64,000 bases of DNA, from positions 248,001-312,000 of IMG/VR virus record IMGVR_UViG_3300017917_001123, one strand, 5' to 3'. Under the pieces are notes generated by a model. It did not search any database, was not told where the DNA came from, and worked only from the letters and a program-made list of their open reading frames with translations. Of this stretch, positions 8,216 through 34,901 are shown in pieces. Within the stretch, counting starts at the first letter, position 1. The number at the start of each line of letters is the position of its first letter. Made by a program: the position numbers and the translations under genes.

Positions 8216-8847
8216 GCTACGTTATCCAACAACACTTTCCTATTAAAACATACAAGACACACTTCGATCCTATTGGGGAACTAAAGGTATCTATGATGAC
8301 TAAGTTAACCAAACTATGGGAACAAGCGGCGGAAGTATCAAACGAAATTACAGACTGTGTTGTTGGACAAACAGATTGTGGATACGTAATTGATCCACAC
8401 TTAGAACGTTGGGAAGAAACACAAGAGCTTATTGCGTTCTTAAACAAACACGTTCAAACATATTGGGAAGTTTTAGGCTATAGCAAAACATTACAGCCTT
8501 ATGTTCATAGCATGTGGAGTAACAGATCGCATGAGCGTAGTTATATTCATTCTCACATACACAGCCCTATGCCAATTGCCGGTACAGTTTATCTAGAAGT
8601 AAACAAGGATATGGGCAACTTTGTGTTAGAAGATCCAAACGAAATGCTGTTACGTTCGCAACCTGTGGACGACCCTGATTCTATTGCTGAAGACGAAATT
8701 GATGTTGCTGTGGGAGATGTTTTAATGTTTCCAGGATATGTGCGTCACAGAACGATTAGTAACAAAACAACAACTCCTAGGATTACATTACCTTTTGTAA
8801 TTGGGTGTAAAGGTACATTCTCAACTGATCATTGGCGTTCAGCATAA
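8212..8847 (+). CDS. 2OG-Fe(II) oxygenase, TIGR02466-like
   Basis: MWSN...HSHIH..IAGTVYL, GDVLMFPGYVRHRT, RITLPF; start re-chosen at the ATGA overlap (8212). Confidence 0.75.
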   Translation: MSYVIQQHFPIKTYKTHFDPIGELKVSMMTKLTKLWEQAAEVSNEITDCVVGQTDCGYVIDPHLERWEETQELIAFLNKHVQTYWEVLGYSKTLQPYVHSMWSNRSHERSYIHSHIHSPMPIAGTVYLEVNKDMGNFVLEDPNEMLLRSQPVDDPDSIAEDEIDVAVGDVLMFPGYVRHRTISNKTTTPRITLPFVIGCKGTFSTDHWRSA

Positions 8848-9518
8848 ATGATTACACGCTGGCCGCGTACAAACTGTTCGTAATCATTGCTGTCTGGAAC
8901 ATATAGTTCTGTTTTAAATCCAAACATCTTTAAAATATTAAGCACAGCATCTAAGTCTGGAACTAGTGCTATGTCTGTTGGTCCGCCTATGTTTGAATCA
9001 CTGTAGTCGCTGACCAATGTAAAAGTACCCAACGGACTTCTTATAGATTTATATGTACCATCTTCTACGTGAGGCTTGCTAGAACTAGCAACCTGTGTTT
9101 CAATAACACAATACTTCTTTGCCATATTGTTAATGCGGCGAAGTATCTCTATAGGATTCTCTACATGATACAGGACACCGTAACACAATGCCAAGTCTAC
9201 TCTAGCAACGTGTTGTTCTATGAGAGCTTGTTTAAATGTAGAACGGCCGTTGCCTAGTTTGCTGTAGATGTATTGTGCTTGTTCAATAGAATCAGTAAAT
9301 CGGTCAATTCCTTCTACCTTAGGAATGTGCTTTTCTAATTCTAATGTAAAGTATCCTTGATGGCAACCCAAGTCTATTGCTGACTCGCAAGGGTGTGTAT
9401 CCAAGAATTGTTGTAACGCTTTAATTCTAGTTTCGTGTAACGGTAACACTTCTGCTGGAAGCATACATTCAATACCGTCAATTGGAAAAGGATAAAACCA
9501 TCCGTTAAGCTGTGCCAT
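8829..9518 (-). CDS. class I SAM-dependent methyltransferase
   Basis: IDLGCHQGYF motif I, GIDRF, DLALCYGVLYHV, CVIETQ. Confidence 0.8.
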   Translation of the reverse strand: MAQLNGWFYPFPIDGIECMLPAEVLPLHETRIKALQQFLDTHPCESAIDLGCHQGYFTLELEKHIPKVEGIDRFTDSIEQAQYIYSKLGNGRSTFKQALIEQHVARVDLALCYGVLYHVENPIEILRRINNMAKKYCVIETQVASSSKPHVEDGTYKSIRSPLGTFTLVSDYSDSNIGGPTDIALVPDLDAVLNILKMFGFKTELYVPDSNDYEQFVRGQRVIIYAERQ

Positions 9519-9557: not shown

Positions 9558-10730
9558 ATGGTGCCGCTAATCAATCAATTTCGTAATGCTAATCTAGAAC
9601 TTCTATTCGACGAAATAAAGGCCCGCGGAGGCACGGTACTAAAACCTACTATTAGTTTGTGCCATAAATGTCACTATCATATACCTGCTTATACCTATCA
9701 CGTAAACAATCAGCTTTGGTTAGTTAAAGTTTGTAAGTCGCACGGTGTAAGCCATCACATGATTGAGCGTGATTACGAATTCTATTCTAATCTAGTTTAT
9801 ACTGAAAGCATTTTTAGTTTTACCAAACTTAATGTAATGACAGAAGTTACAGATCGTTGTAATGCTAATTGCCCACATTGTTATCATATACCAGACAACA
9901 CACCTGACGAAAGTACGGAAACAACAATCAATAGAATACGCAGTTGGTATAAGCCAGGAACTAGTATTATACTAGCAGGTGCTGAGCCTGTGTTACGTAA
10001 TGACATAGCTGAATTAATTCAAGAGATTAACGTTAACTTTCCAGACAGTGAAATAGCAACTCTTAGCAACGGAATACGTTTTAGTGATAAAAAATTAGTT
10101 CGCAAGGTAATGGACTCTAATTTAAAAGCAGTATTGATTGGACTAAATCATCCTAGCTATCTAAACAATCCTACAATAAGAAATAAACAATTAGAAGGTA
10201 TCAATAATTGTTTAGAAGAGGGACTTCCTTTATATTACATTGGATACACAATGAGTAGCACAAGTGAGCTACACGACATTCTAAATGAGATTGTTAGTAT
10301 GCCTTGGCAACCTAGACAGTTTAGAATACGTTACGGAAGTGATATTGGACGTTATCCAGAACAAGAACGCTTGTACGTCAGCGATACCTATAAGTTAATA
10401 AAGAAGTGGTGCGAGGACAATGGCAAACAGTTTGAAGATATGTTAGGAGACAATAATCTTTATCATACAATGGTAAAAGTTGAAGGCAAACCTATTCGAG
10501 TTATTCAATGGTGTGATGAAACAGATATTCACATGGAAGAACTTAGAACAGGACCCTATTGTGATTTTGTAGGAGATGGTATTACAAACTTCCTACATCA
10601 AGTTATTCGCAGAGATATATCAAAAAACAAACATATTGTGTTGCCCGATAAACCTATGAGTAGATATACAATAGATAGCGTGTTTGATAAAACAGAGTTA
10701 GACTTAAATGAATATTGTAACAGAAATTAA
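9558..10730 (+). CDS. radical SAM protein, MJ0619/Tes (GDGT-MAS)-family-like, with N-terminal rubredoxin-like CxxC-x20-CxxH
   Basis: SLCHKC..HIPA....K.C.SHG...D.EFY; EVTDRCNANCPHC; AGAEPVLRNDI; SNGIRF. Confidence 0.75.
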   Translation: MVPLINQFRNANLELLFDEIKARGGTVLKPTISLCHKCHYHIPAYTYHVNNQLWLVKVCKSHGVSHHMIERDYEFYSNLVYTESIFSFTKLNVMTEVTDRCNANCPHCYHIPDNTPDESTETTINRIRSWYKPGTSIILAGAEPVLRNDIAELIQEINVNFPDSEIATLSNGIRFSDKKLVRKVMDSNLKAVLIGLNHPSYLNNPTIRNKQLEGINNCLEEGLPLYYIGYTMSSTSELHDILNEIVSMPWQPRQFRIRYGSDIGRYPEQERLYVSDTYKLIKKWCEDNGKQFEDMLGDNNLYHTMVKVEGKPIRVIQWCDETDIHMEELRTGPYCDFVGDGITNFLHQVIRRDISKNKHIVLPDKPMSRYTIDSVFDKTELDLNEYCNRN

Positions 10731-11262
10731 CTCGCCTATATTAGTAGAGCGTTCTAAACAGTTATGGGAAACTATTTCTAAGATACCTTTGGAATATCAT
10801 AACGGTGTTGCTATATTAGAAGACTACTTAGACGAGCATACTGATATTCCCTGGTTAAGTGGTAAAGTAGGCTGTATTATATTTGAGCCGAATTCTACTT
10901 GCCCTATACATTGCGACGATCACGAAAGTGTAGCATACAATCGAAGTCTAAACATATTAGTAGAAAGCGACGGGGATAATCATTCTACACGATATTACAA
11001 ATGGAAACACGGAGAATGGAATCCTAAAGAGCATCAAGCATTATTTGACAAAGACGTAACTGATTTAAGTTTAGTGTTTGAATTTACTGTAACTAAACCT
11101 ACGCTGTTCTATAATCAAATATTACACGATGTACACAATTATGGTAATAAACGTCGAGTAATGATAATGTGGCTAATTGAAAAATCAGTAACTGACGAAG
11201 AAATATTTTCCTGGTTAGATAAAAATGGAATTACAACCAAAACAATTTTTAAATCCGAATGA
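10708..11262 (+). CDS. putative 2OG-Fe(II)/cupin oxygenase
   Basis: PIHCD, SLNILV, LHDVHN..KRR; paralog of 7613..8215. Confidence 0.5.
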   Translation: MNIVTEINSPILVERSKQLWETISKIPLEYHNGVAILEDYLDEHTDIPWLSGKVGCIIFEPNSTCPIHCDDHESVAYNRSLNILVESDGDNHSTRYYKWKHGEWNPKEHQALFDKDVTDLSLVFEFTVTKPTLFYNQILHDVHNYGNKRRVMIMWLIEKSVTDEEIFSWLDKNGITTKTIFKSE

Positions 11263-11818
11263 CTATAAGTTTCAATACATGTTGCCCTATGTATTAGAAA
11301 CTGCTCAAAAAGAATTAAAAGAATTTTTAGAAACTCATAGTCCTACGGAATTTGCTGACCTTAAATGGTTTGAACAGCAGTACGGCTACGAACTACCCTT
11401 ACAAGACATTATGAAACTATGGTATGCTGTTCCAGTATTAAGAGCAGGTACTACAACAGAATGGTCTTCATTACTGCCTAAGCTCACTGGTGCGGCACAG
11501 GCATTACCGGGCGTTGTTAATTTTAGTCTTAATGCTATTGCCCCTGGCGGACAAGTTCCAGAGCACAGTGATTATACATATGACATGAGAAAAGATTTAA
11601 GCAAAACAGATCTTGCTTATGTGATTCTCATGGCTGTTGATATTCCTAGTACAAATATAAAAGAGTGCGGATTTAAAATTGCCAACAACGAGTTTTTAAT
11701 TAGAACAGATGATATAATTGCGTTTGATGGAGCATTACCGCACAGCGGATGGAATTTTACAGATAAATGGCGTTATACTATTAATATTGATATTAAACAA
11801 GAGTACTGGCATGTTTGA
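11225..11818 (+). CDS. aspartyl/asparaginyl beta-hydroxylase-like 2OG oxygenase
   Basis: IAPGGQVPEHSD, IAFDGALPHSGWN, RYTINIDI. Confidence 0.7.
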   Translation: MELQPKQFLNPNDYKFQYMLPYVLETAQKELKEFLETHSPTEFADLKWFEQQYGYELPLQDIMKLWYAVPVLRAGTTTEWSSLLPKLTGAAQALPGVVNFSLNAIAPGGQVPEHSDYTYDMRKDLSKTDLAYVILMAVDIPSTNIKECGFKIANNEFLIRTDDIIAFDGALPHSGWNFTDKWRYTINIDIKQEYWHV

Positions 11819-12335
11819 GTATAAAAATTATCCTAAGGTTCCTAAGAACATTGTTGACGAAATTGTAGAAGAAGCTAACAAGCAATCTCTTACTGGATTC
11901 TCCGATAAAGTTAATTCAGCAGTCAAAGAAGCATACGGCAATATTGTTGATACTAATTTAGACGGTGTTGCTACAATGACTATGTTTACAAATGATAAAC
12001 TAACAGACTGGGTAAAGAATAATGTCACAGATAAATTTAACGCAGTTCATGTTCAGTGCTTTTCAAACGGCACATACTTTTTCCCGCACGTTGATCTACT
12101 AAGAACTAGAGCTTTAAATTACATACTTAAAACTGCCGATGCCAAAACAGTTTTTTACAAATCTAAAAACAATATTGAAGTTAAACCTAATACTGTTATT
12201 TCCTATCAGGATATAGAGGTTGTAAATACTCGTACATTCGAACCTTATGAATGGCATGAATTAAAAGTAGACAACATACACAGCGTTGAAAACATTAACG
12301 GAACTAGAATAGCAATCACAGTGAGCTTTTTATGA
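11811..12335 (+). CDS. putative 2OG-Fe(II) oxygenase
   Basis: FPHVD..R..ALNY, IHSVEN, RIAITVS; start re-chosen at ATG 11811. Confidence 0.55.
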   Translation: MFEYKNYPKVPKNIVDEIVEEANKQSLTGFSDKVNSAVKEAYGNIVDTNLDGVATMTMFTNDKLTDWVKNNVTDKFNAVHVQCFSNGTYFFPHVDLLRTRALNYILKTADAKTVFYKSKNNIEVKPNTVISYQDIEVVNTRTFEPYEWHELKVDNIHSVENINGTRIAITVSFL

Positions 12336-12943
12336 TTTATATTGGTAACTTTAAAAATTGGCTAGACGAAAATAAAAATATCATCGATAAGATGTTAGGC
12401 GTAGCCACAGGGGAAAGAAACGGAACGTATCACGAAACTGAAATACAACAAATGTATGGTGATCGCAGGCCAGCACCACCTAAAGAAGAAGATCTATATA
12501 AAGAAACACTTGATCTAGCACAACTTTGGGAAGGCGCAGGTTATAAAGTAGAAAGAGTGGGATGGGAAATGTTTTACGAAAGTCATTTAGGTAAGTTTAA
12601 TCCTCCATTCCCTGTTAATTCTAAATATGAGCATTGGTTTTGTAAAATGAGTCCTGGAGATATTCTTCCAATGCATGATGATCGCTTTGAAGGCAAAACG
12701 CTTGAAGAACTTTTATCACAAGGAACAACAGTTAAACGATATTGGATGGCATGTCAGGACGAATTACACGGACACGTATTGGCGTATAAGAATACTCTGC
12801 TAACTGGTTACAAGGCAGGAGATTTATATATGTTTGAAAAAGCCAATGACTTACACGGTTCTTGTAACTTAGGATTTGTTCCTAAGCTGTCCTATCAATT
12901 AACAGTTATTGAAACTAATTTTGATCGTAATGCGGTAAAATAA
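12332..12943 (+). CDS. putative 2OG-Fe(II) oxygenase
   Basis: KMSPGDILPMHDD, RYWM, GDLYMF, LHGSCN, PKLSYQLT. Confidence 0.6.
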   Translation: MIYIGNFKNWLDENKNIIDKMLGVATGERNGTYHETEIQQMYGDRRPAPPKEEDLYKETLDLAQLWEGAGYKVERVGWEMFYESHLGKFNPPFPVNSKYEHWFCKMSPGDILPMHDDRFEGKTLEELLSQGTTVKRYWMACQDELHGHVLAYKNTLLTGYKAGDLYMFEKANDLHGSCNLGFVPKLSYQLTVIETNFDRNAVK

Positions 12944-14061
12944 TCTAACCCAGCATCAAGCGGCAACATAATCAGTACGCCGCTTTTATCATTATTCCAC
13001 AGTCCCATATGTAACCCGTGCTTATAAAAAAGTTTTTCTTTTTCTAAGTAATCGGGTATTTCTTCATTTAAATCTAATTTGTAACAAACACCAAACGATT
13101 TAAAACTTTTAATGATGCCTTGTTTACACAAATCATTAAACAATGTGTCTGCCTGGGCCTTGACTGTTTTATGTTTTGCTAGAATATTTTCTTGCTCTAG
13201 GACCTTTAGATATTCCAGCACACTTAGAATTCCGGCCATTGGAAAACTATAACTAAATCCGTGTAGTAAAGTTTCTAGTTTAACAACATCCGCCACTTGT
13301 TGATTACATAGTGTAGCACTTAGCGGAAAGTAACCTCCGGTGATTCCTTTCCCAATACAGAAAATATCTGGTTTTATATCAAATGTTTGAAACCCAAATA
13401 TTGTTCCTGTCTTGCCTGCGCAGAATGCTATATCGTCTATTATCAATAGCGTACCTGTATCATCACATATTTGTCTTAGGTGTTTAAAAAACTCGTTACC
13501 TAAATTGTTTAGGCCCGCCTGCCAACTACATGTTTCAATAATTACTGCCGCAGTATTTGTATTGATTTCATTAAGACCGCTAATAGTTTTACAGTCTGGA
13601 TGCCTTCCGAAAGTATCTGTTAGATAATCACTGCCGCTAACACTAGCACTCATAAATGTGCTTCCGTGATAACTATCTCTAAAACCCACAATAGTTTTTC
13701 TTTTGCCCTTCCAATATAGTTGTACTAACTTAATGGCCCCTTCTACAGCATCACTTCCGCTGAGAGAGTACATGGGATAAAAACCCCCACTTAGATTATA
13801 TAACTTATTTGATAATTCAATTGTAGCCGAATTCGCAGTTACAAAATCGCTTTGGCAAAATGGGAGGTCCTTTAGTTTTTCTGTTACTCGTTCTAGTATA
13901 TCAGTTCTTTTAAAACCTAAAGGAAAGCATCCGCTACTTCCTAAACCTAAATCAATAACATCTTTACCGTTGGAATCAATAAACCCGTAGGGAGTTACTT
14001 CCTTGATATTCTTTACAGGAGGCAACGGATCATTGATGCTAAACGGAAATAATTGTTTCAT
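12895..14061 (-). CDS. class-III PLP aminotransferase (BioA/omega-amine type)
   Basis: SGSDAVEGAIK, SYHGST, LLIIDDI...GKTG, PDIFCIGKGITGGYFPLSA (Schiff-base Lys). Confidence 0.9.
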   Translation of the reverse strand: MKQLFPFSINDPLPPVKNIKEVTPYGFIDSNGKDVIDLGLGSSGCFPLGFKRTDILERVTEKLKDLPFCQSDFVTANSATIELSNKLYNLSGGFYPMYSLSGSDAVEGAIKLVQLYWKGKRKTIVGFRDSYHGSTFMSASVSGSDYLTDTFGRHPDCKTISGLNEINTNTAAVIIETCSWQAGLNNLGNEFFKHLRQICDDTGTLLIIDDIAFCAGKTGTIFGFQTFDIKPDIFCIGKGITGGYFPLSATLCNQQVADVVKLETLLHGFSYSFPMAGILSVLEYLKVLEQENILAKHKTVKAQADTLFNDLCKQGIIKSFKSFGVCYKLDLNEEIPDYLEKEKLFYKHGLHMGLWNNDKSGVLIMLPLDAGLDYFTALRSKLVSITVN

Positions 14062-15191
14062 TCGTATCTTTTTATATATGGAAATAATTTACGATAATCG
14101 GTACCTCTAGTTTTATCATATAGATCTAAAACTCTAGTACGTTCTTTAACTACTTCGTCAAAATCGTCAGGCACTACGTTGACTATTTTATGTATGTCAT
14201 TAAACTCTTCTGGCAATGTATTTTGATTTACTATATCTACCAGTTGTTGTTTTTGTTCCAACTCTAAATACTCTGGACTAAAGTAATCGGGAGCGATAAC
14301 ATAATTAATCTGCGTAAAACTATAGTTTCGCATCTGTTTAAACTCTTCAAATCTTTTAAAAATGTCTACTAAGTCAAATATATTAAAAATAGAAAGAGTA
14401 AAACAAATACCCCATTTAATGTCTGTTTCTGCTGAAAGAGTAACAATATTCCTTTCTAATGTTTCTAAATCGGCAGGGAATCGTATGAAATTAAACTTAG
14501 CAGGATCTATATGATCATAACTAACACCGACTGTTGTTTTAGGAAAGTCTGCAAGTCTTTTTAATATTCCTGTGCTTGATAAATTAGAAGTGGCACTAAT
14601 TGGTAAATTTGTATAACCTTTGTCCTTACAATATTCCAATAACTTAATAGTCATCGGGCTAGCAAACGGCTCACCGCCCTGTAAGTTAATAATAGAGCAT
14701 CCTGGTAATGCTGAGTCTAAGTGCTGTCCTACATTGTCAACATTGTTTATATCTAATTCATCTCTGTCAATCTCAGATAACCACAAGGGCAACTTAACAT
14801 TATCTTTCTTCCATTGTTCTACTTCTTTAGCATGTTGAGAACTTGCTAAATGGTTACAGGTAATACATTTGAGATTACAATCGTTGCCTGTCTTAATATC
14901 TAATTCAATTGGCACAGGCAAGGGAACATCTAATACTTGATTGTTCTGTTGTCGTCTGCTAACATACCCTTTGTCTTCAACAGTCCAACATCGTTCGCAG
15001 TTAGGATTTTTAACACCATTTAATAAATCGTGACGTAGTTTATTATAGTACTCGCTGTTCCATACTTCTTCAATTGAATGATGCTCAATATTATAACCTG
15101 TAGGTATTTTGCTAAGACAGCAAGGCAAATAATCACCGTTGCGCTCTGTGGCAATATGAATAAAAGGTTTGATACAGTAAGTATTACTCAT
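14058..15191 (-). CDS. radical SAM protein with N-terminal twitch domain
   Basis: N-terminal C..PF...NG...CC...WNS...C.RCW; CNLKCITC; GGEP. Confidence 0.85.
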   Translation of the reverse strand: MSNTYCIKPFIHIATERNGDYLPCCLSKIPTGYNIEHHSIEEVWNSEYYNKLRHDLLNGVKNPNCERCWTVEDKGYVSRRQQNNQVLDVPLPVPIELDIKTGNDCNLKCITCNHLASSQHAKEVEQWKKDNVKLPLWLSEIDRDELDINNVDNVGQHLDSALPGCSIINLQGGEPFASPMTIKLLEYCKDKGYTNLPISATSNLSSTGILKRLADFPKTTVGVSYDHIDPAKFNFIRFPADLETLERNIVTLSAETDIKWGICFTLSIFNIFDLVDIFKRFEEFKQMRNYSFTQINYVIAPDYFSPEYLELEQKQQLVDIVNQNTLPEEFNDIHKIVNVVPDDFDEVVKERTRVLDLYDKTRGTDYRKLFPYIKRYE

Positions 15192-16374
15192 AGTCTTTAA
15201 TATAAGGAAATAAACTTCTGTAGTCCGTACTGCGGAGTTTGTCGTACATTCTTAAAATACGAGTACGTTCTTTAACCACATGATCAAAGTCAATAGGATG
15301 TTCGTCAAGTATCCTACATATATTAGCAATATCTTCATTTGCCGAATAAGGTATTAACAGTTCTTTTACTTCCTGACGCTGTTCTGGCTCCATATACTCT
15401 ATGCTTAGATAATCAGGCTGTTGTACAAGTCTATAATAAGAGTGTGTATTAAGTTTGCCTTCTTTGTGTAATGACTCGTACATATCAATTAGTCTAGGTA
15501 GTTGATATATGTTTAATATAGATATAGCAAGCGAAATGCCACGTTGTATATTTGTTTCACACAGTTTATCAAAGTTGTTAAGAAATTGATTATAGTCAGC
15601 AGGATATCTAATATATTTGAAATAGTCTGCTCTATCGTGATCCCAACTAATAAACAATGATGCTTCTTTAAACTTGTTGAGCTTATCTAATATATTGTTT
15701 GATATGTTTGTTAAGTTAGTAACAAACCCTATCTTTAAATGTGTGTAATCTTGTTCTATACAGTAGTCTAGTATAGCATGTAAGTCAGGACTGCTTAAAG
15801 GTTCGCCACCGTCAATTAACAGTATGTCTACTTTACCTAATACATTTTTAAGGTTGTTAGACATATTGCCTTTTGGTGCTTTCATTTTACTACCAAACTG
15901 TGCGTCAATATACTCTATCCATTCTGGCACAGGCAATCCTTGCTTACGCATTAATTTAACTTCTGTTTCGTGCGAGGAACTGTGATACGGTGTACACATC
16001 AAACATTTAAGATTACAGGTGTTGCTTAACTTTACATCTAATTGCGACGGTGCTATATTGAGGTAGCCGTTGTTATTTTTACAATCAGCAATAGCATTAT
16101 TAAGTTCTTCGTTAAGTGGAAAGTTGCTTTTAACTCTTTTACTAACTAATCCTCTAGAGTCAGCTTCCCAGCATCTAATACAGTTTGAATTCTTAACTCC
16201 GTTAAGTAAGTCCATTCTTAGATTACGGAAGTATTCATTATTCCAACCTGTTTCGATATCTTCTGTATAGATATTAGAATTAGATGAACAGTTACTTTGT
16301 TGACAAGCCTGTAGATCTCCGTTACGTTCTGTACAAACGTTAATAAACGGAAGAATACAAAAAGTATCACTCAT
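15184..16374 (-). CDS. radical SAM protein with N-terminal twitch domain
   Basis: Same architecture; CNLKCLMC; GGEP; paralog of its neighbours. Confidence 0.85.
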   Translation of the reverse strand: MSDTFCILPFINVCTERNGDLQACQQSNCSSNSNIYTEDIETGWNNEYFRNLRMDLLNGVKNSNCIRCWEADSRGLVSKRVKSNFPLNEELNNAIADCKNNNGYLNIAPSQLDVKLSNTCNLKCLMCTPYHSSSHETEVKLMRKQGLPVPEWIEYIDAQFGSKMKAPKGNMSNNLKNVLGKVDILLIDGGEPLSSPDLHAILDYCIEQDYTHLKIGFVTNLTNISNNILDKLNKFKEASLFISWDHDRADYFKYIRYPADYNQFLNNFDKLCETNIQRGISLAISILNIYQLPRLIDMYESLHKEGKLNTHSYYRLVQQPDYLSIEYMEPEQRQEVKELLIPYSANEDIANICRILDEHPIDFDHVVKERTRILRMYDKLRSTDYRSLFPYIKDYE

Positions 16375-17665
16375 AGCGTTTCAAATACGGAAACAAGGTC
16401 TTGTGATCAGTTCCGCGAATTCTATCATACATATCTAGCACACGAGTTCTTTCTTTACAGACGGCATCGTGGTCTGGCTGTCGTCTATCCATGTAACCCG
16501 GGACACTAATTACACTTTCAACAAATTCTGGATTGTCTCTAAAGATCTTCCAGTCTTTGTTCTTAAACATAAAGCGATGTATTCTATCTGATATTTCTAC
16601 CTTTTGATTTTGCTCTAAGTAGCGTAGGCTAAAGTAATTAGGATAGTAAATTAAACCAAAGTTAATAACAAACCTATTAGGAGTGCGTTGGGAAATCTTT
16701 TCCCACTCTGTAAAGATATCCTCAAAGTCAAAGATATTAAAGATACCCCATGTAGTGCTTAGTTTCTTTTCAATATGGTCATACTCCCATATCTTATCAA
16801 AGTTCTCTTTAAACACAGCGTAGTCTGCTGGGTATCTAATAAAGTTAAACTTTACAGGGTCTATGTGATCGTAACTAATACACAGCATTGGATGTTTAAA
16901 TTGATCTAACAGATTAATTGTTTTGGGATTAATAACACTTAGGTTAGTGATAATCTGTAGCATCATATTAGGTGCGTAACCTTTTTCAACGCATTGTTCT
17001 AATATGCGTTGTGTTGTTTTGTTTACCAAAGGTTCGCCGCCTACAAGACTCATATGTATTGCTTGCTTGAGGCTAGGATCTAAATTGTTAACAACTTGTT
17101 CCACATCTAGATTGCGTGGATTAAAGTCATTCATGTCTAACTTTAATTCAATTACACGCTGATCCCATGTCTTCATTAACGCAGGTATTTCTTCGCCTGC
17201 GGCTTTCATTGCTTCTACTTCTTCGTGCTGTAGACTGCTACTACCCGGGTAACACATAATACACTTAAGGTTACATTGTGTACCTACCTTTAAGTCTAAG
17301 TCAGTAGGCGGTGTAGTCAGTGCGCCGTCGTTAGAAATAGCATCCTTAACAAATGAATCATAGTCAGGATACATGTTATGCTTTTCGTCATTTGTCTTTT
17401 GTCGCTTGCTGTATGCTCCGCTTGCTTCATAGTTCCAGCAATACTCGCACGTAGAGTTTTTAACTCCGTTGATTAGATCTTTGCGTAGTTGTTTGTAGTG
17501 CTCGCTGTTCCAAACTTCAATAACAGAGTCTTTACGCATATTGTATGCCGTGCCATCTGGTTTAGTAATAACCTTCTCTTCTGAACAACAGCAGACACGA
17601 TAGTTGCCATCGTTAGTAGAACTAATATGTGTAAATGGTAAAAGGCAAAAAGTATTCTGATTCAT
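16367..17665 (-). CDS. radical SAM protein with N-terminal twitch domain (alternative start 17674)
   Basis: FCLLPF..NYRVCCC..WNS..CEYCW; CNLKCIMC; GGEP. Confidence 0.85.
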   Translation of the reverse strand: MNQNTFCLLPFTHISSTNDGNYRVCCCSEEKVITKPDGTAYNMRKDSVIEVWNSEHYKQLRKDLINGVKNSTCEYCWNYEASGAYSKRQKTNDEKHNMYPDYDSFVKDAISNDGALTTPPTDLDLKVGTQCNLKCIMCYPGSSSLQHEEVEAMKAAGEEIPALMKTWDQRVIELKLDMNDFNPRNLDVEQVVNNLDPSLKQAIHMSLVGGEPLVNKTTQRILEQCVEKGYAPNMMLQIITNLSVINPKTINLLDQFKHPMLCISYDHIDPVKFNFIRYPADYAVFKENFDKIWEYDHIEKKLSTTWGIFNIFDFEDIFTEWEKISQRTPNRFVINFGLIYYPNYFSLRYLEQNQKVEISDRIHRFMFKNKDWKIFRDNPEFVESVISVPGYMDRRQPDHDAVCKERTRVLDMYDRIRGTDHKTLFPYLKRYE

Positions 17666-17673
17666 TATCAGCA

Positions 17674-17697
17674 TATTTAACTGCTAGTAAATACCTC
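17674..17697. promoter_or_regulatory. back-to-back late-type promoters
   Basis: TTAAATA minus (17680-17674) 8 nt before ATG 17665; TAAATA plus (17688-17693) 4 nt before ATG 17698. Confidence 0.55.
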
Positions 17698-18240: not shown

Positions 18241-18805
18241 CATAGATGCTAGGTAATGGATTGTCTGGCCAGTCGATGTAATCATTAAAGGCATGCTTAA
18301 CTAGTATGCCCATATCTAACTTACCATTCTTTGCCAGCTTGTCAACTAAGGACTTTCTATCCGGGTTTAGGATAGGCTCATAGAACTTCATGTCAACGGG
18401 TTGTTCGCTGTAGTCACTTGCGCTGTAGAACGCAAATGCTCGCATCTGTCCTGTACTATCAACATAGAAGTACTTTGGATAGAAGCTAGGCTTGTAAATT
18501 CCTTCTTGGTGTAGGTCTTTAACAATAGTTTCTAGTTGTTCCTTATAATCATCACACAAGACTTCGTCGCAAGTATTGCCATTCCATTCGATGTAAATTT
18601 GTCTACACGCATCGATAGAATGTTTAATTTTTGGTGCCCAAGAATATTTTTGTAAACGAACAAGATAGTCGCGCTCGCGTTGATAACTGCTATCAATTAG
18701 CTCTGCTGGATATTTGTTGTTGTTGGGATTAAAATCTAATACAGCAAAGGTACTATAGATTTTTAAGTTAAAAATGCCTTGGTTAATAACTTTCAATATG
18801 ATCAA
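18215..18805 (-). CDS. protein-kinase-like fold protein with degenerate catalytic motifs
   Basis: RERDYL..L...WAPKI; LHQEGIYKPSFYPKYFYVD..G.MRAFAF aligns to HxxGIxHxDxKPxNxxxDxxGxxKxxDF without the catalytic D/N/D. Confidence 0.45.
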   Translation of the reverse strand: MIILKVINQGIFNLKIYSTFAVLDFNPNNNKYPAELIDSSYQRERDYLVRLQKYSWAPKIKHSIDACRQIYIEWNGNTCDEVLCDDYKEQLETIVKDLHQEGIYKPSFYPKYFYVDSTGQMRAFAFYSASDYSEQPVDMKFYEPILNPDRKSLVDKLAKNGKLDMGILVKHAFNDYIDWPDNPLPSIYAKVYNPNS

Positions 18806-19586
18806 TTCCTAGTTTCTGGCGGAACGTTTCTGTAAACTTGCCGTCAATGCGTAAGCTGTAGCTTTGTTCCATAATTGTTTCTCCTCCGTGCCAGTCTTGA
18901 TCGTTCCACCAAGCGGCTCGGCAGTTAATATAAGTTTTGTCCTTGCGTTCTGGATCCCAAAGATAAAACGCTTTCTTTGTGTTAGGACGAATGTGAATAA
19001 ACTCGTTGCGATGTGGAAATGTTTTATCAATGCCGTTTTTAGCATCTAAGTCACGATGCTCAAAAGGAATGCCATTATGATCACAGTGAAAGAATATTAC
19101 TCTGCCAATGTGTTCAAAGATACCAAATGTAATTAAGTCCTCAACCCAACGGACAACATTAGGAAAATAAGCAGCCTCGGCTGTGAGCTTACGTGGAGCG
19201 GTTCTATCGTCCCAACTGCCTTCTTCCCAGAGGAAATAGTAAATGTATGGATCGTAAGCACCTAATGCCATCTTTAGGTACCTAGTAAATTTGTTTCGTG
19301 TTTCGTGATCTTTAATTCCGCAGTATAGATCCCATCCACCTTTTTTAATTGGGTCATCGTCGGGGAGTGCTAGGAATTCTTCTAAGGCTTTATAGATTGG
19401 CTTCCAATTTGGAACATAGCTCATATCTTTAAAGGTAAAACCTGGAGTCATCCAAGTGCCTTCTTTGGCAAACATTCGAGCCTCAGCAAACCCGCGAATG
19501 ATTTCGGGTTGTAGGCTCTCAAACTCATCCATCCTTAAATACTGTTCAAGATTGAAATACGGTCGGTTGTTAATACCTTTGATCAT
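18783..19586 (-). CDS. hypothetical protein, probable cupin/2OG oxygenase fold
   Basis: GRVIFF..HNGIPFEHRD, WWNDQDWHGG, YSLRIDG. Confidence 0.5.
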   Translation of the reverse strand: MIKGINNRPYFNLEQYLRMDEFESLQPEIIRGFAEARMFAKEGTWMTPGFTFKDMSYVPNWKPIYKALEEFLALPDDDPIKKGGWDLYCGIKDHETRNKFTRYLKMALGAYDPYIYYFLWEEGSWDDRTAPRKLTAEAAYFPNVVRWVEDLITFGIFEHIGRVIFFHCDHNGIPFEHRDLDAKNGIDKTFPHRNEFIHIRPNTKKAFYLWDPERKDKTYINCRAAWWNDQDWHGGETIMEQSYSLRIDGKFTETFRQKLGIDHIESY

Positions 19587-23869: not shown

Positions 23870-24630
23870 TCAGTTATAGAATTAAGTCTAGCAATGGTTC
23901 AGTTCTTTTTGAAGGACTAGTACCTTACGGACTACTGCCATTTGTTCAAAAAGCATTTCTTACAAATCAAGATAGATTAATGGAGTTTGAAGTAGCAACA
24001 ACATCTCACGTAATTTCTAGAAACTTTTCAGACTTACCGTCAAACACTCAATACGATACAACCAATCCAGCACACATTTCAAACAGAATGTATCAGGATT
24101 TGATTACAAGCAAAGAATTAACACGCATTGCCTCTTTGAATAATGCGGCATTTGAAACTTGGCAAGCACAGTTAGATGCTGAGAGAGTTCAACAAGAACA
24201 AAACGCACTCAATGAAGTAGCCACTCAGGCACAGACATTATACGAGCAGTCCTTATTAAATCAACAACAGATTAGTGAAGAATATGCTCAACATCTAAGA
24301 GACGAAGCATACAGATTAGACATGCTCCGTGCTCAAACTGTTACACAGATAGCAGTTGATCCTACAACCAGCGTCAGTGCTCTAATGAGCGAAGTTGGAC
24401 ATAACTCGGATGTACAGCGACAAATTGCCGCGTGTATGCGAGCAAACAAAGAAATTACTAAACTAGTTCTAGCTAGCACATCAACATTGTGGAATACCAG
24501 CTACGAAATTATGGATGTTGTTGCTATACAAGCGGCAACGGATAACGAAATTGCTGATCAATTAGTTGGTAAGATTCCAGAAACAAGTCTTTTATATCAA
24601 AGCCTACAACGTCTCGGTATTCTTAGTTAA
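23845..24630 (+). CDS. hypothetical coiled-coil protein
   Basis: 261-aa ORF with a Q/E/A-rich helical centre. Confidence 0.6.
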   Translation: MFNTSTSLISYRIKSSNGSVLFEGLVPYGLLPFVQKAFLTNQDRLMEFEVATTSHVISRNFSDLPSNTQYDTTNPAHISNRMYQDLITSKELTRIASLNNAAFETWQAQLDAERVQQEQNALNEVATQAQTLYEQSLLNQQQISEEYAQHLRDEAYRLDMLRAQTVTQIAVDPTTSVSALMSEVGHNSDVQRQIAACMRANKEITKLVLASTSTLWNTSYEIMDVVAIQAATDNEIADQLVGKIPETSLLYQSLQRLGILS

Positions 24631-26098
24631 AGACTTTGACACCGTAGGTATTTTCCCATTCTCTAGAATCCTCTTCGTTGTTAACCATAGGCTTGCCTTT
24701 GATGTTAAGGCTTGTGTTTAACAGTACAGGACACCCTGTAGTTTTATACCACATAACTAGTAGGGCATGAAACTCAGGATTCATTTCTTTCGTGACAGTT
24801 TGTACACGACTAGTCCCGTCAGCATGGACGATAGCAGGAAATAGCTCAGGATTCCGGCAACGAGCGACCATTTGCATATAAGGACTGCTACCACTAGGGA
24901 TATCAAAGTAATAGTGAGCCAGCTCAGCCAAAACTGCCGGCGCAAAAGGTCTGAATTCTTGTCGTTGTTTAATTCCATTTACTTTATCCTTCATCTCTAA
25001 ACTTCTAGGGTCGGCTAATAGACTTCTATTACCCAATGCTCTTGGTCCAAACTCTGCTGGCCCTCTTGCTACTCCACAAATGCCTCTGGTCATTAAGAAA
25101 TGTAATATCTTAGCGTTGTTATGTTTTGTTGGGATGTTGTATCCCAAGTATGGTGTGTAGTCGATACGTTGTTTTGTTTTTGCCAATACACTACCAATTG
25201 CGCTTCCGCTATCGCCCGGAGCAGGCATAATCCAAACGTTATCAAAATACTTGTAGGCAATAGGATTTGCTGAACAGTTCAAAGCACAGCCGCCCATAAA
25301 GACTAAATTCTTGCTAGGAACACATTGTCTAGCATACTGTAACACACGTTCGAATAGTAGTTCATATACTGCCTGCGTTGCTGCCGCAATATCAAACATA
25401 TCCTGCTCTGTAGTCAAATCAGGACGCCAGTCTTTACAACCTTTGTGAAAATTTCTTTTAAATGAGACTAGTCCATTAGTTTCACTAAACGGAAAATGAA
25501 TAAAATCATTTAACATTGTTGTGAATAACCTCTTAGGATCACCATATGCGGCCATGCCCATGAGAATGTACTCTTCCTCGTTGGGCTTCAATCCACACCG
25601 TTGTGTCATTGCGCTATACCACAAGCCGATACTTTCTGGATACTCTAAACTGAATACCTTTGTAAGCTCGTCATCCTTGCCCTGCCAAATAGACAGCGTA
25701 TCATATTCTCCGATGGCATCGATAACTAGAACGCAGGCTTCATCAAACTTGCTAGTGTAGTAGCCTGCTGCCGCATGGCTATAATGATGTGCTACATATT
25801 CTATTGCTGTAGGAAATATGCGTTTTGATACATATTTCTTTACATTGTTTTCTCCCCACATCCATCCTTGACCTGCTTCTAGTTGACGCATAGTTTTAAG
25901 GAACGGACGTTCGTACCAAACAACTTTGTCTGGCGTGAGTCCTCTGTTATGTAGGTAGTAAGTTAAGTCAGAGTCCAAATCTGGATCGTTTTTAATTCCA
26001 GACCACCGCTCTGTTTCTGTGGCAAATACTAGCCGATCGTTATCAAATACCGCAACTGCGGCATTGTGACTGTTAGCTGATATTCCCCAAGTAATCAT
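24623..26098 (-). CDS. carbamoyltransferase (NodU/CmcH family)
   Basis: SHNAAVA, HHYSHAA, DAIGE, GGCALN, PAPGDSG, EFGPRALGNRS, FRPFAP, DGTSRVQTV, LLNTSLN. Confidence 0.95.
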   Translation of the reverse strand: MITWGISANSHNAAVAVFDNDRLVFATETERWSGIKNDPDLDSDLTYYLHNRGLTPDKVVWYERPFLKTMRQLEAGQGWMWGENNVKKYVSKRIFPTAIEYVAHHYSHAAAGYYTSKFDEACVLVIDAIGEYDTLSIWQGKDDELTKVFSLEYPESIGLWYSAMTQRCGLKPNEEEYILMGMAAYGDPKRLFTTMLNDFIHFPFSETNGLVSFKRNFHKGCKDWRPDLTTEQDMFDIAAATQAVYELLFERVLQYARQCVPSKNLVFMGGCALNCSANPIAYKYFDNVWIMPAPGDSGSAIGSVLAKTKQRIDYTPYLGYNIPTKHNNAKILHFLMTRGICGVARGPAEFGPRALGNRSLLADPRSLEMKDKVNGIKQRQEFRPFAPAVLAELAHYYFDIPSGSSPYMQMVARCRNPELFPAIVHADGTSRVQTVTKEMNPEFHALLVMWYKTTGCPVLLNTSLNIKGKPMVNNEEDSREWENTYGVKVFN

Positions 26099-26860: not shown

Positions 26861-28046
26861 TAAAGTAGGCCTTATAGTGTTCTTCTAACTCAATCATTGC
26901 TTTGTGCTTTTTAATCGTTGTTAGATTTTCATAGTTGTGTTTTAAAATTGGTTTGATTGATTCTAACCAGCTTGCTTTGTCTTCTATGGCTTTTAGTTTT
27001 TGTAGACTATTGATAATAGCATCTAGTCTTTGCTCTGTAGGCAATGTGTCGTAGCTTTCGTCTATAAATCCGTCAAACGTTTTATATCCTAAATCTCGCA
27101 ACCTCTTCAAACTTCCCCGGCCACCCACAACAATAAACGGCTGTAGACAAGCAATAGGTTTAAAAATCTTTTCACTACAAAATGTAGATAACTCGTAGTC
27201 AGCAAACTGCGGCTCTGTTACAATGCTAACCCATGACTGTGCGTACAGATTTGGTAACACTCTTCCAATGTACACAGGATCTGGTTCTACATTGTTCGGC
27301 TTGCCATCAATTAACATAGGCAAATACTTGCGTCCTTGTTCTAGCAAACTTTGACTTGGCCAATCATTAGTTAATGGATGTATATGATGACCGTAGTCGT
27401 TCATACTAACAATACCGTCATCAAGTAAGCCCGCTTCTAATAACTTTAAGAAGAACCAGCTTCTATGTGAACGTGGCCTCTTGTTTAAGCAATCATATAG
27501 TTTAGTCTTTGTATTAGCAGACACAACGGGCATTGGTCTAGAACGAGCATACCACATAAGGTCTGGTTCAAAGTGCTCAAATGTAATAACCTTCATAGGC
27601 TTTACATTGTGTGTGCTAACATATATCGAATACTGCTCCGGTGCCTGTGCGTTGCCTGTTATGTATATAACTGCCTGCGGGGTAACACTATGGTTAGCTA
27701 ACTCTTGATGAAACCAATCCCATAACTGAGGTGTCTGATAACCTTCAAGTGATTGATCGATACACAACATTGCCCGCCCTTCCTGTAGGTCTAGCAAGTT
27801 CTGCTTAGGCAAATGGTTTAGAATACTGTCTCTAGCCCAGTCGTGCGGATGATGGTTAACACCTGTGCCAATAATGTAATGATCTGCGCTTCCTGTGATA
27901 ATGCTTATGTGATTGTCTTGATTAAAGTGATTAATCATTCTATCTAGCATAGGAGGTGTGGTAAATCGTTTGATACCAGATCCTGCCCTGTCTGTACAAG
28001 CAATAAAGTTTTCTCTAGCAGATATATTTTCAAACGCTACACGCAC
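26853..28046 (-). CDS. glycosyltransferase-like protein (GT10/GT-B-like C-terminus)
   Basis: CLNKRPR.HR; SIVTE...FCSEKIFKPI...PFIVVG resembles the fucosyltransferase EN..Y.TEK..A...PI..G motif. Confidence 0.45.
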   Translation of the reverse strand: MRVAFENISARENFIACTDRAGSGIKRFTTPPMLDRMINHFNQDNHISIITGSADHYIIGTGVNHHPHDWARDSILNHLPKQNLLDLQEGRAMLCIDQSLEGYQTPQLWDWFHQELANHSVTPQAVIYITGNAQAPEQYSIYVSTHNVKPMKVITFEHFEPDLMWYARSRPMPVVSANTKTKLYDCLNKRPRSHRSWFFLKLLEAGLLDDGIVSMNDYGHHIHPLTNDWPSQSLLEQGRKYLPMLIDGKPNNVEPDPVYIGRVLPNLYAQSWVSIVTEPQFADYELSTFCSEKIFKPIACLQPFIVVGGRGSLKRLRDLGYKTFDGFIDESYDTLPTEQRLDAIINSLQKLKAIEDKASWLESIKPILKHNYENLTTIKKHKAMIELEEHYKAYFNV

Positions 28047-34580: not shown

Positions 34581-34901
34581 TTATACCCTAAACGACTCGC
34601 CGCATCCGCAACGATCTCTTTCATTAGGGTTCTTAAATTCAAATCCTTCGTTTAGCCCGTTCCTTACATAATCAACAGTTAGGCCATCTACATAAACATG
34701 GCTTTTGGGATCAACAAAAATGCTGAATCCGGTTTTTTCAAACACTAAATCGGAACTGTCGGGCTCGTCTACATATTCTAACACATAAGCTAGCCCTGAA
34801 CAGCCAGTAGTTTTAACGCCTATCCGAATGCCCATTCCTTTCCCTCTCTTTTGTAGGTTTAACAAGAATTTATTGTAGGCTTCAGTTGTTAAGTTGACCA
34901 T
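34581..34901 (-). CDS. iscA: iron-sulfur cluster assembly protein IscA (HesB family)
   Basis: [25 protein letters not shown]...CGCGESF. Confidence 0.92.

What the first reader, a model, noticed from the sequence alone, without database searches (positions are those of the whole stretch)
9558..10730. Phage radical-SAM enzyme resembling tetraether-lipid synthase (Tes/GDGT-MAS), without its auxiliary clusters
Seen: SLCHKC..HIPA....K.CKSHG...D.EFY, then EVTDRCNANCPHC, AGAEPVLRNDIAELI and SNGIR. From my recollection of MJ0619 (SLCPIC..RIPA....K.CPEHG...D.ELY; DVTNRCNLNCPIC; AGGEPTVRSDLPELI; TNGIK), this matches the rubredoxin-like Cys3His domain and the core. The N-terminal auxiliary-cluster segment (CPYDCGLC) and the C-terminal Cys ligands appear absent. 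Established: GDGT-MAS couples lipid tails by C(sp3)-C(sp3) bond formation using auxiliary clusters. Inference: this is a stripped-down viral member of the family with different chemistry, possibly on a lipid-like substrate. With LpxO-like hydroxylases, HpnP-like B12 enzymes and an HpnO-class aminotransferase nearby, a lipid-remodelling reading of the island is conceivable.
Basis: partly seen in the sequence, partly recalled or inferred. Interest (0 to 1): 0.7.

Follow-up and report, generated by a model that had tools for sequence, protein, structure and literature searches.

The report
Phage-only minimal Tes-like radical-SAM enzyme
A freshwater T4-like jumbo phage encodes a radical-SAM enzyme whose nearest characterised relative is the archaeal tetraether-lipid synthase, but it lacks both extra iron-sulfur clusters that enzyme needs to join lipid tails, belongs to a large unnamed virus-only family, and sits in an island of at least 15 radical-SAM genes whose product is unknown.

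Summary
The ORF (9558-10730, +, 390 aa) and every quoted motif are real. Its nearest solved relative is GDGT-MAS/Tes (7tol/7tom): profile E 5e-23 to 1e-45 against 4e-8 to 6e-15 for MoaA, and structural Z 28.5 over 330 residues against about 17 for the next folds. The N-terminal Cys3His site has exactly the Tes spacing (CX2CX20CX2H). The [Fe4S4]N motif is absent, falling in an alignment gap. The four [Fe4S4]C ligand motifs occur in 0 of 60 family members. The protein scores 58 bits against the curated Tes model (cut-off 450), so it is Tes-like but not a Tes. It belongs to a large family known only from uncultivated viral contigs and essentially absent from 185,579 prokaryotic genomes. A tree suggests the auxiliary clusters were gained in the Tes/TrsS lineage rather than lost in phages. 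The lipid reading has no specific support: the neighbours are generic B12-radical-SAM enzymes, a BioA/ArgD-like aminotransferase and many 2OG oxygenases, and the conserved C-terminal half is strongly polar. The most likely function is a one-cluster, single-hydrogen-abstraction tailoring step on a polar substrate made by the surrounding island. The substrate is unknown.

The parts
9558..10730 (+). Whole gene: 390-aa ribbon plus radical-SAM protein (stop codon included)
   Evidence: ORF; Pfam PF23545 + PF04055; confident AF2 model, pLDDT 88.5, pTM 0.88
9639..9767 (+). Rubredoxin-like / zinc-ribbon domain (aa 28-70) with ligands C35, C38, C59, H62 in the pattern CX2CX20CX2H
   Evidence: PF23545 36.5 bits over aa 28-70. 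Four beta-strands at pLDDT 93-97. Same spacing as C9X2C12X20C33X2H36 of GDGT-MAS (PMC9433317). Ligands invariant in 60/60 and exact spacing in 59/60.
9858..9881 (+). Radical-SAM cluster motif C101-X3-C105-X2-C108 (CNANCPHC)
   Evidence: Invariant; aligned to CNLNCPIC of 7tol; the only CX3CX2C motif in all 60 family members
9975..9989 (+). AGAEP: the 'GGE'-type SAM-binding motif (aa 140-144)
   Evidence: G141, A142 and E143 invariant; aligned to AGGEP of 7tol
9831..10337 (+). Partial TIM-barrel radical-SAM core (about aa 92-260, strands at 92-98, 136-141, 166-170, 191-197, 225-232, 254-259)
   Evidence: PF04055 over aa 96-227; DSSP of the model; hhalign to Tes/TrsS through aa 283
10338..10727 (+). 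C-terminal domain (aa 261-390). It is the most conserved part of the family and is polar and charged (FRIRYGSDIGRYP, DNNxYH, IQWCDETD, NFLHQVIRRD). There is no conserved Cys3 site.
   Evidence: Invariant columns; C285/C319/C335 variable; structurally aligned to 7tom up to model residue 359; sequence-level match to the Tes C-terminus not significant; hydropathy -0.70
10708..12943 (+). Four co-oriented, overlapping small ORFs (10708-11262, 11225-11818, 11718 or 11811-12335, 12332-12943) with HxD...H motifs. They are cupin/2OG-oxygenase-like and probably share a transcription unit with the gene.
   Evidence: ORFs and overlaps; PF05118 for 11225-11818; the first is conserved downstream in L001 at 35% identity but not in distant loci; the fourth belongs to co-travelling cluster 2
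8829..9518 (-). Divergent class-I SAM methyltransferase 40 bp upstream
   Evidence: Pfam Methyltransf_31/23; a 242-aa gene with no Pfam hit on record occupies the same divergent position upstream of the homolog in L001/L002; its homology to the window methyltransferase was not tested

Best explanation
The gene encodes a soluble radical-SAM enzyme with two metal sites: one SAM-cleaving [4Fe-4S] cluster (C101/C105/C108) and one mononuclear Cys3His site (C35/C38/C59/H62) in an N-terminal rubredoxin-like ribbon. It shares ancestry and overall fold with tetraether synthase (Tes/GDGT-MAS) and TrsS, but it belongs to a separate, virus-specific lineage that has neither of their auxiliary [4Fe-4S] clusters. 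Proposed mechanism (inferred): an electron reaches the radical-SAM cluster, possibly relayed by the surface ribbon site. SAM is then cleaved to a 5'-deoxyadenosyl radical, which abstracts one hydrogen from a substrate held between the barrel and the conserved polar C-terminal domain (R256, R258, D262, R265, D298, N300, Y302, H303, R314, D320, D323, H347, R351, R352, D353). With no cluster on which to park a first radical, the Tes-type two-radical tail-to-tail C-C coupling is not expected. The likelier chemistry is a one-radical tailoring step (epimerisation, dehydrogenation or dehydration, rearrangement or intramolecular bond formation). The substrate is probably polar, perhaps phosphate- or carboxylate-bearing. 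It would be an intermediate or a macromolecular side chain handled by the surrounding island of at least 15 radical-SAM enzymes, many 2OG oxygenases, methyltransferases, an aminotransferase and a carbamoyltransferase. Shown here: homology, fold, metal-ligand pattern, absence of the auxiliary sites, viral restriction and island context. Inferred: electron relay, substrate class and reaction type.
For: Specific kinship with Tes: phmmer to 7tol E 1e-12, next MoaA 0.007; family profile 4.6e-23 against 4e-8; broader profile 1.3e-45 against 6.5e-15 in one ribbon-to-core alignment; hhalign to genuine Tes/TrsS at probability 99.9, E 3.6e-32; Foldseek E 5e-15; VIA Z 28.5 over 330 residues against about 17 for NifB/MoaA. 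Ribbon ligand spacing identical to the published Tes site. [Fe4S4]N absent: it falls in an alignment gap and each member has a single CX3CX2C. [Fe4S4]C absent: the motifs HPxCG, GMxFxD, RCxIH and PFC are in 0/60 phage proteins, against 8/8 Tes/TrsS for three of them and 5/8 for the loose RCxIH pattern, although that Cys column is invariant in the alignment. C285/C319/C335 are replaced in 11-13 of 60 members and are not conserved in wider relatives. Polar character: 49 of 86 conserved C-half positions are polar or charged, and C-terminal GRAVY is -0.70 against -0.29/-0.27 in Tes. Viral restriction: 190 confirmed IMG/VR loci; Atlas clusters are 75-100% viral, most 96-100%, one with 879 members; one fragment among 185,579 species genomes. 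Island context recurs in reshuffled form over 36 de-replicated locus groups. An IscA-type Fe-S carrier lies in the island.
Against: No substrate, product or partner was identified, and no gene is an obligate neighbour. I could not read model coordinates, so I have not shown whether C285, C319 and C335 lie together and could hold a non-canonical cluster in the roughly 80% of members that keep them. The co-folding job with clusters was not run by the tool. The polar-pocket argument rests on composition, not on a mapped cavity. Fatty-acid-desaturase-family genes lie 2-3 genes away in two related loci, which leaves a lipid link open. No RNA run could be listed, so expression is not shown.
Confidence: 0.6

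Rival explanations
1. It is a lipid-modifying enzyme after all: a viral Tes-like enzyme acting on an acyl, isoprenoid or hopanoid chain of the host envelope. The chemistry would be simpler than C-C coupling, for example desaturation, hydroxylation priming or cyclisation.
For: Its only biochemically characterised relative is a lipid enzyme (PMC9433317). PF05118 proteins, the family that includes LpxO, flank it. FA_desaturase-family genes lie nearby in L004 and L012. The best weak NCBIfam match for two of the three B12-radical-SAM neighbours, and the second-best for the third, is a 'lipid biosynthesis B12-binding/radical SAM' model.
Against: Those matches score 50-61 bits against a cut-off of 360. 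HpnP and HpnO are not among the listed matches (HpnO not among the 25 best of 69). This phage has no FA_desaturase gene. The conserved C-terminal half is rich in Arg, Asp, Asn and His and is markedly more hydrophilic than in Tes. The cluster that Tes uses in catalysis next to its lipid pockets is absent.
Confidence: 0.15
2. It modifies a protein or peptide as part of a RiPP-like or virion-protein hypermodification system. The island would work like a proteusin-type pathway: B12-radical-SAM C-methylases, radical-SAM epimerases or crosslinkers, and 2OG hydroxylases.
For: The island combines B12-radical-SAM enzymes, SPASM/twitch radical-SAM enzymes, Asp/Asn-hydroxylase-type and other 2OG oxygenases, methyltransferases and a halogenase-like flavoprotein. 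The best fold matches of the conserved co-traveller at 18783-19586 are protein and nucleic-acid hydroxylases (PHD2, AspH, ALKBH5), though weak. The island abuts the tail and baseplate module.
Against: No precursor-peptide gene was found. The one apparent gap in the island is another radical-SAM gene. No RiPP recognition element or leader protease was detected. Matches to RiPP maturase models are all far below cut-off.
Confidence: 0.15
3. It is a glycyl-radical-enzyme activase or other protein-radical activating enzyme, as some automatic JGI names suggest.
For: Source names such as 'organic radical activating enzyme' and 'pyruvate-formate lyase-activating enzyme' appear for some homologs. PflA is among the structural matches at Z 15.6.
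Against: No glycyl-radical domain or anaerobic ribonucleotide reductase is present in the 93%-complete phage genome, while the control genomes were detected. PflA scores far below Tes (15.6 against 28.5). The extra ribbon and the 130-aa conserved C-terminal domain are not activase features.
Confidence: 0.03
4. It acts on a nucleotide or sugar-nucleotide, in the way MoaA, viperin or BlsE do, feeding DNA, glycan or aminocyclitol-type decoration. This is a more specific version of the best explanation.
For: After Tes, the next sequence and fold matches are MoaA, viperins and BlsE. The conserved positions include many Arg residues. The island holds an aminotransferase, a carbamoyltransferase, methyltransferases and twitch-domain radical-SAM enzymes, a mix seen in aminoglycoside-type pathways (my own knowledge, not tested).
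Against: These matches are what any radical-SAM core gives. No glycosyltransferase or nucleotidyltransferase was identified in the island genes scanned. The amidinotransferase-like guess for cluster 7 was not confirmed by Pfam, and that gene is absent from this phage.
Confidence: 0.25

Closest known systems
Tetraether lipid synthase Tes / GDGT-MAS (MJ0619; PDB 7TOL, 7TOM; NCBIfam NF045702)
   Same: N-terminal rubredoxin-like Cys3His site with identical CX2CX20CX2H spacing. Radical-SAM core with closely similar motifs (VTxRCNxNCPxC, AGxEP, xNGI). Overall fold: Z 28.5 with 330 aligned residues, including part of the C-terminal domain.
   Different: About 100-130 residues shorter. It lacks the [Fe4S4]N insertion (CX3CX2C plus His) and all four [Fe4S4]C ligand motifs, including the labile Met. 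It scores 58 bits against a cut-off of 450. The C-terminal half is polar and its sequence is not alignable to Tes. It is viral rather than archaeal or bacterial.
TrsS, radical SAM (seleno)protein (NCBIfam NF045646); reaction unknown
   Same: It is the best-scoring curated model (70.6 bits) and has the same ribbon and core. It forms a clade with Tes in the tree.
   Different: The cut-off is 490 bits. TrsS carries the same two auxiliary-cluster motif sets as Tes, which the phage family lacks.
Unnamed short ribbon plus radical-SAM proteins (330-420 aa) of viral and some cellular metagenomic origin (e.g. P0122-P0192; AFDB B5EC24, 316 aa)
   Same: Same ribbon plus single-cluster architecture, alignable over the full length at 22-46% identity. 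They share FRIR, DNNxYH and NFxHQ motifs. The nearest ones also sit in phage islands rich in radical-SAM genes.
   Different: They lack the 25-30-residue N-terminal extension and the clade-typical C285/C319/C335. None has a name or a known function.
MoaA (GTP 3',8-cyclase)
   Same: It is the next-best solved relative of the core.
   Different: Its scores are 15 to 30 orders of magnitude weaker than those of Tes. MoaA has no ribbon, and its C-terminal auxiliary cluster has no counterpart here. NCBIfam scores are 32-38 bits against cut-offs of 231-325.

Membership tests
Tes / GDGT-MAS (NF045702) | Reaches the curated whole-protein score of the equivalog model (450 bits) | tested here: not met
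   58.4 bits, matching only profile positions 89-223 of 486. Genuine Tes proteins P0380 and P0358 score 659 and 625 bits.
Tes / GDGT-MAS (NF045702) | Rubredoxin-like mononuclear site CX2CX20CX2H | tested here: met
   C35X2C38X20C59X2H62; PF23545 above the gathering score; same spacing as the published C9X2C12X20C33X2H36; 59/60 members exact
Tes / GDGT-MAS (NF045702) | Radical-SAM CX3CX2C cluster and GGE-type SAM motif | tested here: met
   C101/C105/C108 and G141-A142-E143 are invariant; PF04055 scores 45.5 bits
Tes / GDGT-MAS (NF045702) | N-terminal auxiliary [Fe4S4]N cluster (C73, C77, C80 plus His, between ribbon and core) | tested here: not met
   No Cys between C59 and C101. The Tes segment is an insertion in hmmsearch and hhalign alignments. 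All 60 members have a single CX3CX2C.
Tes / GDGT-MAS (NF045702) | C-terminal auxiliary [Fe4S4]C cluster (3 Cys plus labile Met439), the site of the S-C intermediate | tested here: not met
   The ligand columns are invariant in the 8 Tes/TrsS proteins aligned. The corresponding motifs are in 0 of 60 phage-clade proteins. No Cys-to-Cys correspondence appears in the C-terminal hhalign. The clade's own C285/C319/C335 are variable. Whether those three lie together in space could not be checked.
Tes / GDGT-MAS (NF045702) | Overall fold of 7TOL/7TOM | tested here: met
   Foldseek E 5e-15, TM 0.54-0.56. VIA Z 28.5, rmsd 3.8 A, 330 residues, model 24-359.
Tes / GDGT-MAS (NF045702) | Long hydrophobic lipid-binding pockets leading to the 5'-carbon of SAM | tested here: inconclusive
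Indirectly, conserved C-half positions are 57% polar or charged, and C-terminal GRAVY is -0.70 against -0.28 in Tes.
Tes / GDGT-MAS (NF045702) | Catalyses C(sp3)-C(sp3) coupling of two lipid tails | not testable with these tools
   Needs anaerobic enzymology or lipidomics.
TrsS (NF045646) | Reaches the curated score (490 bits) | tested here: not met
   70.6 bits; genuine TrsS proteins score 495-606 bits
Radical SAM superfamily (PF04055) | Pfam gathering score and the CX3CX2C motif | tested here: met
   45.5 bits against 29.5
Glycyl-radical activating enzymes | Co-occurring glycyl-radical client enzyme | tested here: not met
   No PF01228 or PF13597 match in the 93%-complete phage genome, while the controls were detected
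MoaA (TIGR02666 / TIGR02668 / NF001199) | Curated score | tested here: not met
   31.6-37.7 bits against cut-offs of 231-325

The most novel reading that the evidence does not exclude
The ribbon plus radical-SAM protein is the signature enzyme of a virus-borne radical-chemistry pathway that has not been described. T4-like jumbo phages of fresh water carry roughly 37-kb islands with at least 15 radical-SAM enzymes, about ten 2OG oxygenases, methyltransferases, an aminotransferase, a carbamoyltransferase and their own Fe-S carrier. Together these would build or hypermodify a polar metabolite or a macromolecule of the virion or host surface. Within that pathway, the minimal Tes-like enzyme would catalyse a reaction type not yet known for the Tes/TrsS superfamily, using only its Cys3His iron site as an auxiliary redox centre.
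Probability: 0.3. Interest if true: 0.8.

Novelty: new variant of a known kind. Interest (0 to 1): 0.55.

Why it matters
Tes/GDGT-MAS is the only enzyme of its branch with a known reaction, and its chemistry depends on an auxiliary cluster. This phage family has hundreds of members. It keeps the unusual Cys3His ribbon and the fold but has neither auxiliary cluster. It therefore offers a natural minimal scaffold for asking what the ribbon site does and what the ancestral chemistry of the branch was. The tree suggests that the lipid-coupling machinery was added later. Separately, an island of at least 15 radical-SAM genes with its own Fe-S carrier in a phage is an unusually large investment in oxygen-sensitive chemistry. 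Identifying its product could reveal a new class of phage-made metabolite or of virion or host modification.

Tried and rejected
- **Co-folding with cofactors:** It gives no evidence either way.
- **Cultured phages:** tblastn against 50,697 phage records found no match for the target and only core fragments for a wider relative. BFVD gave only generic radical-SAM hits.
- **Fixed partner gene:** none was found. The downstream 184-aa ORF is conserved only in close relatives, and no family occurs in more than 20 of 36 locus groups.
- **Precursor peptide:** the one apparent gap in the island is another radical-SAM gene that my ORF caller had dropped.
- **Amidinotransferase guess for co-travelling cluster 7:** Pfam did not confirm it, and the gene is absent from this phage.
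- **Tes C-terminal ligands:** hhalign of the C-terminal domains alone was not significant (E 0.01-0.06).
- **Promoter and terminator scan:** counts did not exceed shuffled sequence.
- **RNA evidence:** no RNA run was listed.
- **Literature:** searches for phage radical-SAM islands or viral Tes homologs found nothing. TrsS has no known reaction.
- **Long hits from the representatives search:** P0258 and P0268 turned out not to be Tes.
Full report
**1. The observation**

An ORF of 390 aa runs from an ATG at 9558 to a stop ending at 10730 on the + strand. All quoted motifs are present. Pfam finds two domains above their gathering scores: PF23545 over residues 28-70 (the N-terminal zinc ribbon of MJ0619/'HMPTM', 36.5 bits against 27) and PF04055 Radical_SAM over residues 96-227 (45.5 bits against 29.5). 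The 7tol sequence printed by HMMER shows SLCPICLKRIPA, CPYDCGLC, DVTNRCNLNCPIC, AGGEPTVRSDLPELI and TNGIK.

**2. What kind of genome this is**

The window is bases 248,001-312,000 of a 331,570-bp IMG/VR virus record estimated to be 93% complete. It encodes tail, baseplate and virion proteins, a DNA ligase and an exonuclease, and a T4-type Gp23 capsid protein. Its structural proteins are only 28-35% identical to those of T4-like cyanophages. The DNA is held in pond and freshwater metagenomes. The host is unknown.

**3. Kinship with Tes is specific, not generic**

- By single sequence, 7tol scores E 1e-12 and MoaA 0.007.
- A 30-sequence family profile gives 4.6e-23 against 4e-8.
- A profile of the wider family gives 1.3e-45 against 6.5e-15, as one continuous alignment from ribbon to core.
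- I obtained genuine Tes proteins (P0380 at 659 bits, P0358 at 625 bits) and six genuine TrsS proteins. hhalign of the phage family against them gives probability 99.9% and E 3.6e-32 over phage residues 24-283.
- A confident AF2 model (pLDDT 88.5, pTM 0.88) has 7tol/7tom as its top Foldseek hits (E 5e-15, with MoaA next at 1e-8).
- VIA-align gives Z 28.5 over 330 residues (model 24-359), against about 17 for NifB and MoaA.

Neither is met.

**4. Metal sites**

The Tes paper gives the rubredoxin-type site as C9X2C12X20C33X2H36. It gives [Fe4S4]N as C73, C77, C80 plus His, and [Fe4S4]C as three Cys plus the labile Met439 (PMC9433317; PMC13459092).

- **Ribbon:** the phage protein has C35X2C38X20C59X2H62, the same spacing. 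The ligands are invariant in 60 of 60 unique family members and the spacing is exact in 59 of 60.
- **[Fe4S4]N:** there is no Cys between C59 and C101. The Tes segment carrying these ligands is an insertion relative to the family. Every member has a single CX3CX2C.
- **[Fe4S4]C:** the Tes/TrsS alignment shows four invariant ligand columns, in HPxCG, GMxFxD, RCxIH and PFC. None of these motifs occurs in any of the 60 phage-clade proteins.
- **The clade's own C-terminal cysteines:** C285, C319 and C335 are present in only 47, 49 and 49 of 60 members. They are replaced by Ala, Val, Ser, Pro or Asn. They are not conserved in wider relatives, two of which have no Cys after the core. They are therefore not obligate cluster ligands.

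**5. Membership**

Against the curated models the protein scores 58 bits for Tes (cut-off 450) and 71 bits for TrsS (cut-off 490). It works from the same scaffold but is not a member of either family.

**6. The family**

At least 500 proteins of 380-400 aa, at 50-80% identity, share the architecture. At 50% clustering they collapse to one representative. Behind it lie many shorter ribbon plus radical-SAM relatives (123 representatives below E 1e-30), all unnamed.

The family is viral:
- ESM Atlas clusters with this architecture are 75-100% viral (most 96-100%), and one has 879 members.
- IMG/VR holds 190 confirmed loci.
- A scan of one genome for each of 185,579 prokaryotic species found a single 4.7-kb MAG fragment.
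- No cultured phage or UniProt virus has it.

**7. Loss or gain of the clusters**

I built a quick maximum-likelihood tree of 46 proteins, rooted on ribbon-less MoaA-like relatives.
- The phage clade (support 99) sits inside a strongly supported, long-stemmed clade of short relatives, the sampled ones lying on viral contigs (support 100).
- Only the Tes+TrsS crown (support 99) carries the second CX3CX2C and the C-terminal motifs.
- Its immediate outliers and the ~400-aa cellular ribbon proteins lack them.

Parsimony therefore favours gain of the auxiliary clusters on the Tes/TrsS stem rather than loss in phages. The backbone is unresolved and the root is an assumption.

**8. Context**

The gene lies in an island spanning about 240-277 kb of the genome, with at least 15 CX3CX2C genes. 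The island contains:
- three B12-type radical-SAM enzymes;
- four N-terminal-twitch radical-SAM proteins above the NF033640 cut-off;
- many small HxD...H cupin or 2OG oxygenases, four of them in an overlapping row directly downstream of the target;
- two methyltransferases, a class-III aminotransferase, a carbamoyltransferase and a halogenase-like flavoprotein;
- an IscA-type Fe-S carrier.

Across 85 loci in 36 de-replicated groups the same gene pool recurs in reshuffled order, with no obligate partner. The most conserved co-traveller (18783-19586) is another double-stranded-beta-helix oxygenase by fold.

**9. The lipid reading**

The B12 enzymes match ladderane-lipid, PhpK, HpnJ and HpnR models at only 30-61 bits against cut-offs of 360-650, and HpnP is not among the listed matches. 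The aminotransferase is closest to BioA and ArgD, and HpnO is not among the 25 best of its 69 matches. This phage has no fatty-acid-desaturase-family gene, although two related loci do. The conserved C-terminal half of the enzyme is 57% polar or charged. Its hydropathy is -0.70, against -0.29 and -0.27 in Tes. The lipid hypothesis is not excluded, but it has no specific support.

**10. Other rivals**

The activase label used by some automatic annotations has no client. The genome contains no glycyl-radical enzyme and no NrdD.

**11. Verdict**

The protein is best described as the founding example of a virus-specific, single-cluster branch of the Tes/TrsS ribbon plus radical-SAM superfamily. 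It most probably carries out a one-radical tailoring step on a polar substrate within a very large phage radical-SAM and oxygenase island. Substrate and product remain unknown.

Noticed in passing
window about 1-29400, continuing upstream to G000:C1:240124 (outside the window): A phage island of roughly 37 kb holds at least 15 ORFs with a CX3CX2C radical-SAM motif, interleaved with about ten cupin/2OG-like ORFs. One radical-SAM gene (G000 245467-246579) was missed by a greedy ORF caller.
   Followed up: partly
window 34581-34901 (-): An A-type Fe-S cluster carrier (IscA/SufA family, PF01521, 66 bits) is encoded at the edge of the island. This fits a phage that has to load many Fe-S enzymes.
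   Followed up: no
window 14058-15191, 15184-16374, 16367-17674, 28030-29391 (all -): Four paralogous radical-SAM proteins pass the curated cut-off of NF033640 ('twitch domain-containing radical SAM protein', 242-313 bits against 170). In them the SPASM/twitch-like Cys-rich domain lies at the N-terminus, before the core.
   Followed up: partly
window 18783-19586 (-): A 267-aa protein with no Pfam match is 81% identical to its L016 counterpart, whereas the L016 homolog of the target gene is only about 60% identical. Its AF2 model (pLDDT 82) has a 2OG/Fe(II)-oxygenase fold with weak matches to PHD2, ALKBH5 and AspH, and H177, D179 and H233 are invariant.
   Followed up: yes
window 24623-26098 (-) and 35679-36929 (+): A NodU/CmcH-type carbamoyltransferase and a tryptophan-halogenase-like flavoprotein. 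Both are PHROG families annotated as auxiliary genes, and the halogenase recurs in related islands.
   Followed up: no
L003 7609-8898; L004 538-1335; P0067 context: Related islands carry S-adenosylhomocysteine hydrolase and SAM decarboxylase genes. This suggests the phages manage the SAM pool that these islands consume.
   Followed up: no
L045 3400-4404, L038 5831-6898 and other loci (cluster 7; not in this phage): A 356-aa co-travelling family ends in a GIHClTLD motif that recalls the catalytic Cys of amidinotransferase-type enzymes. Pfam gave no match, so this is only a lead.
   Followed up: partly
L011 (JBDQMZ010000113.1, 4.7-kb contig of a Nanopelagicales MAG): The only 'cellular' hit for the family is the end of a short MAG contig. 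It is probably a phage fragment binned into the MAG rather than a bacterial gene.
   Followed up: no
L017 and L018: Two viral contigs carry two copies of the ribbon plus radical-SAM gene, so the family can be duplicated within an island.
   Followed up: no
window 11718-12335 (+): The listed TTG start overlaps the previous gene by 101 nt. An in-frame ATG at about 11811 would give an 8-nt overlap and is the more likely start.
   Followed up: no
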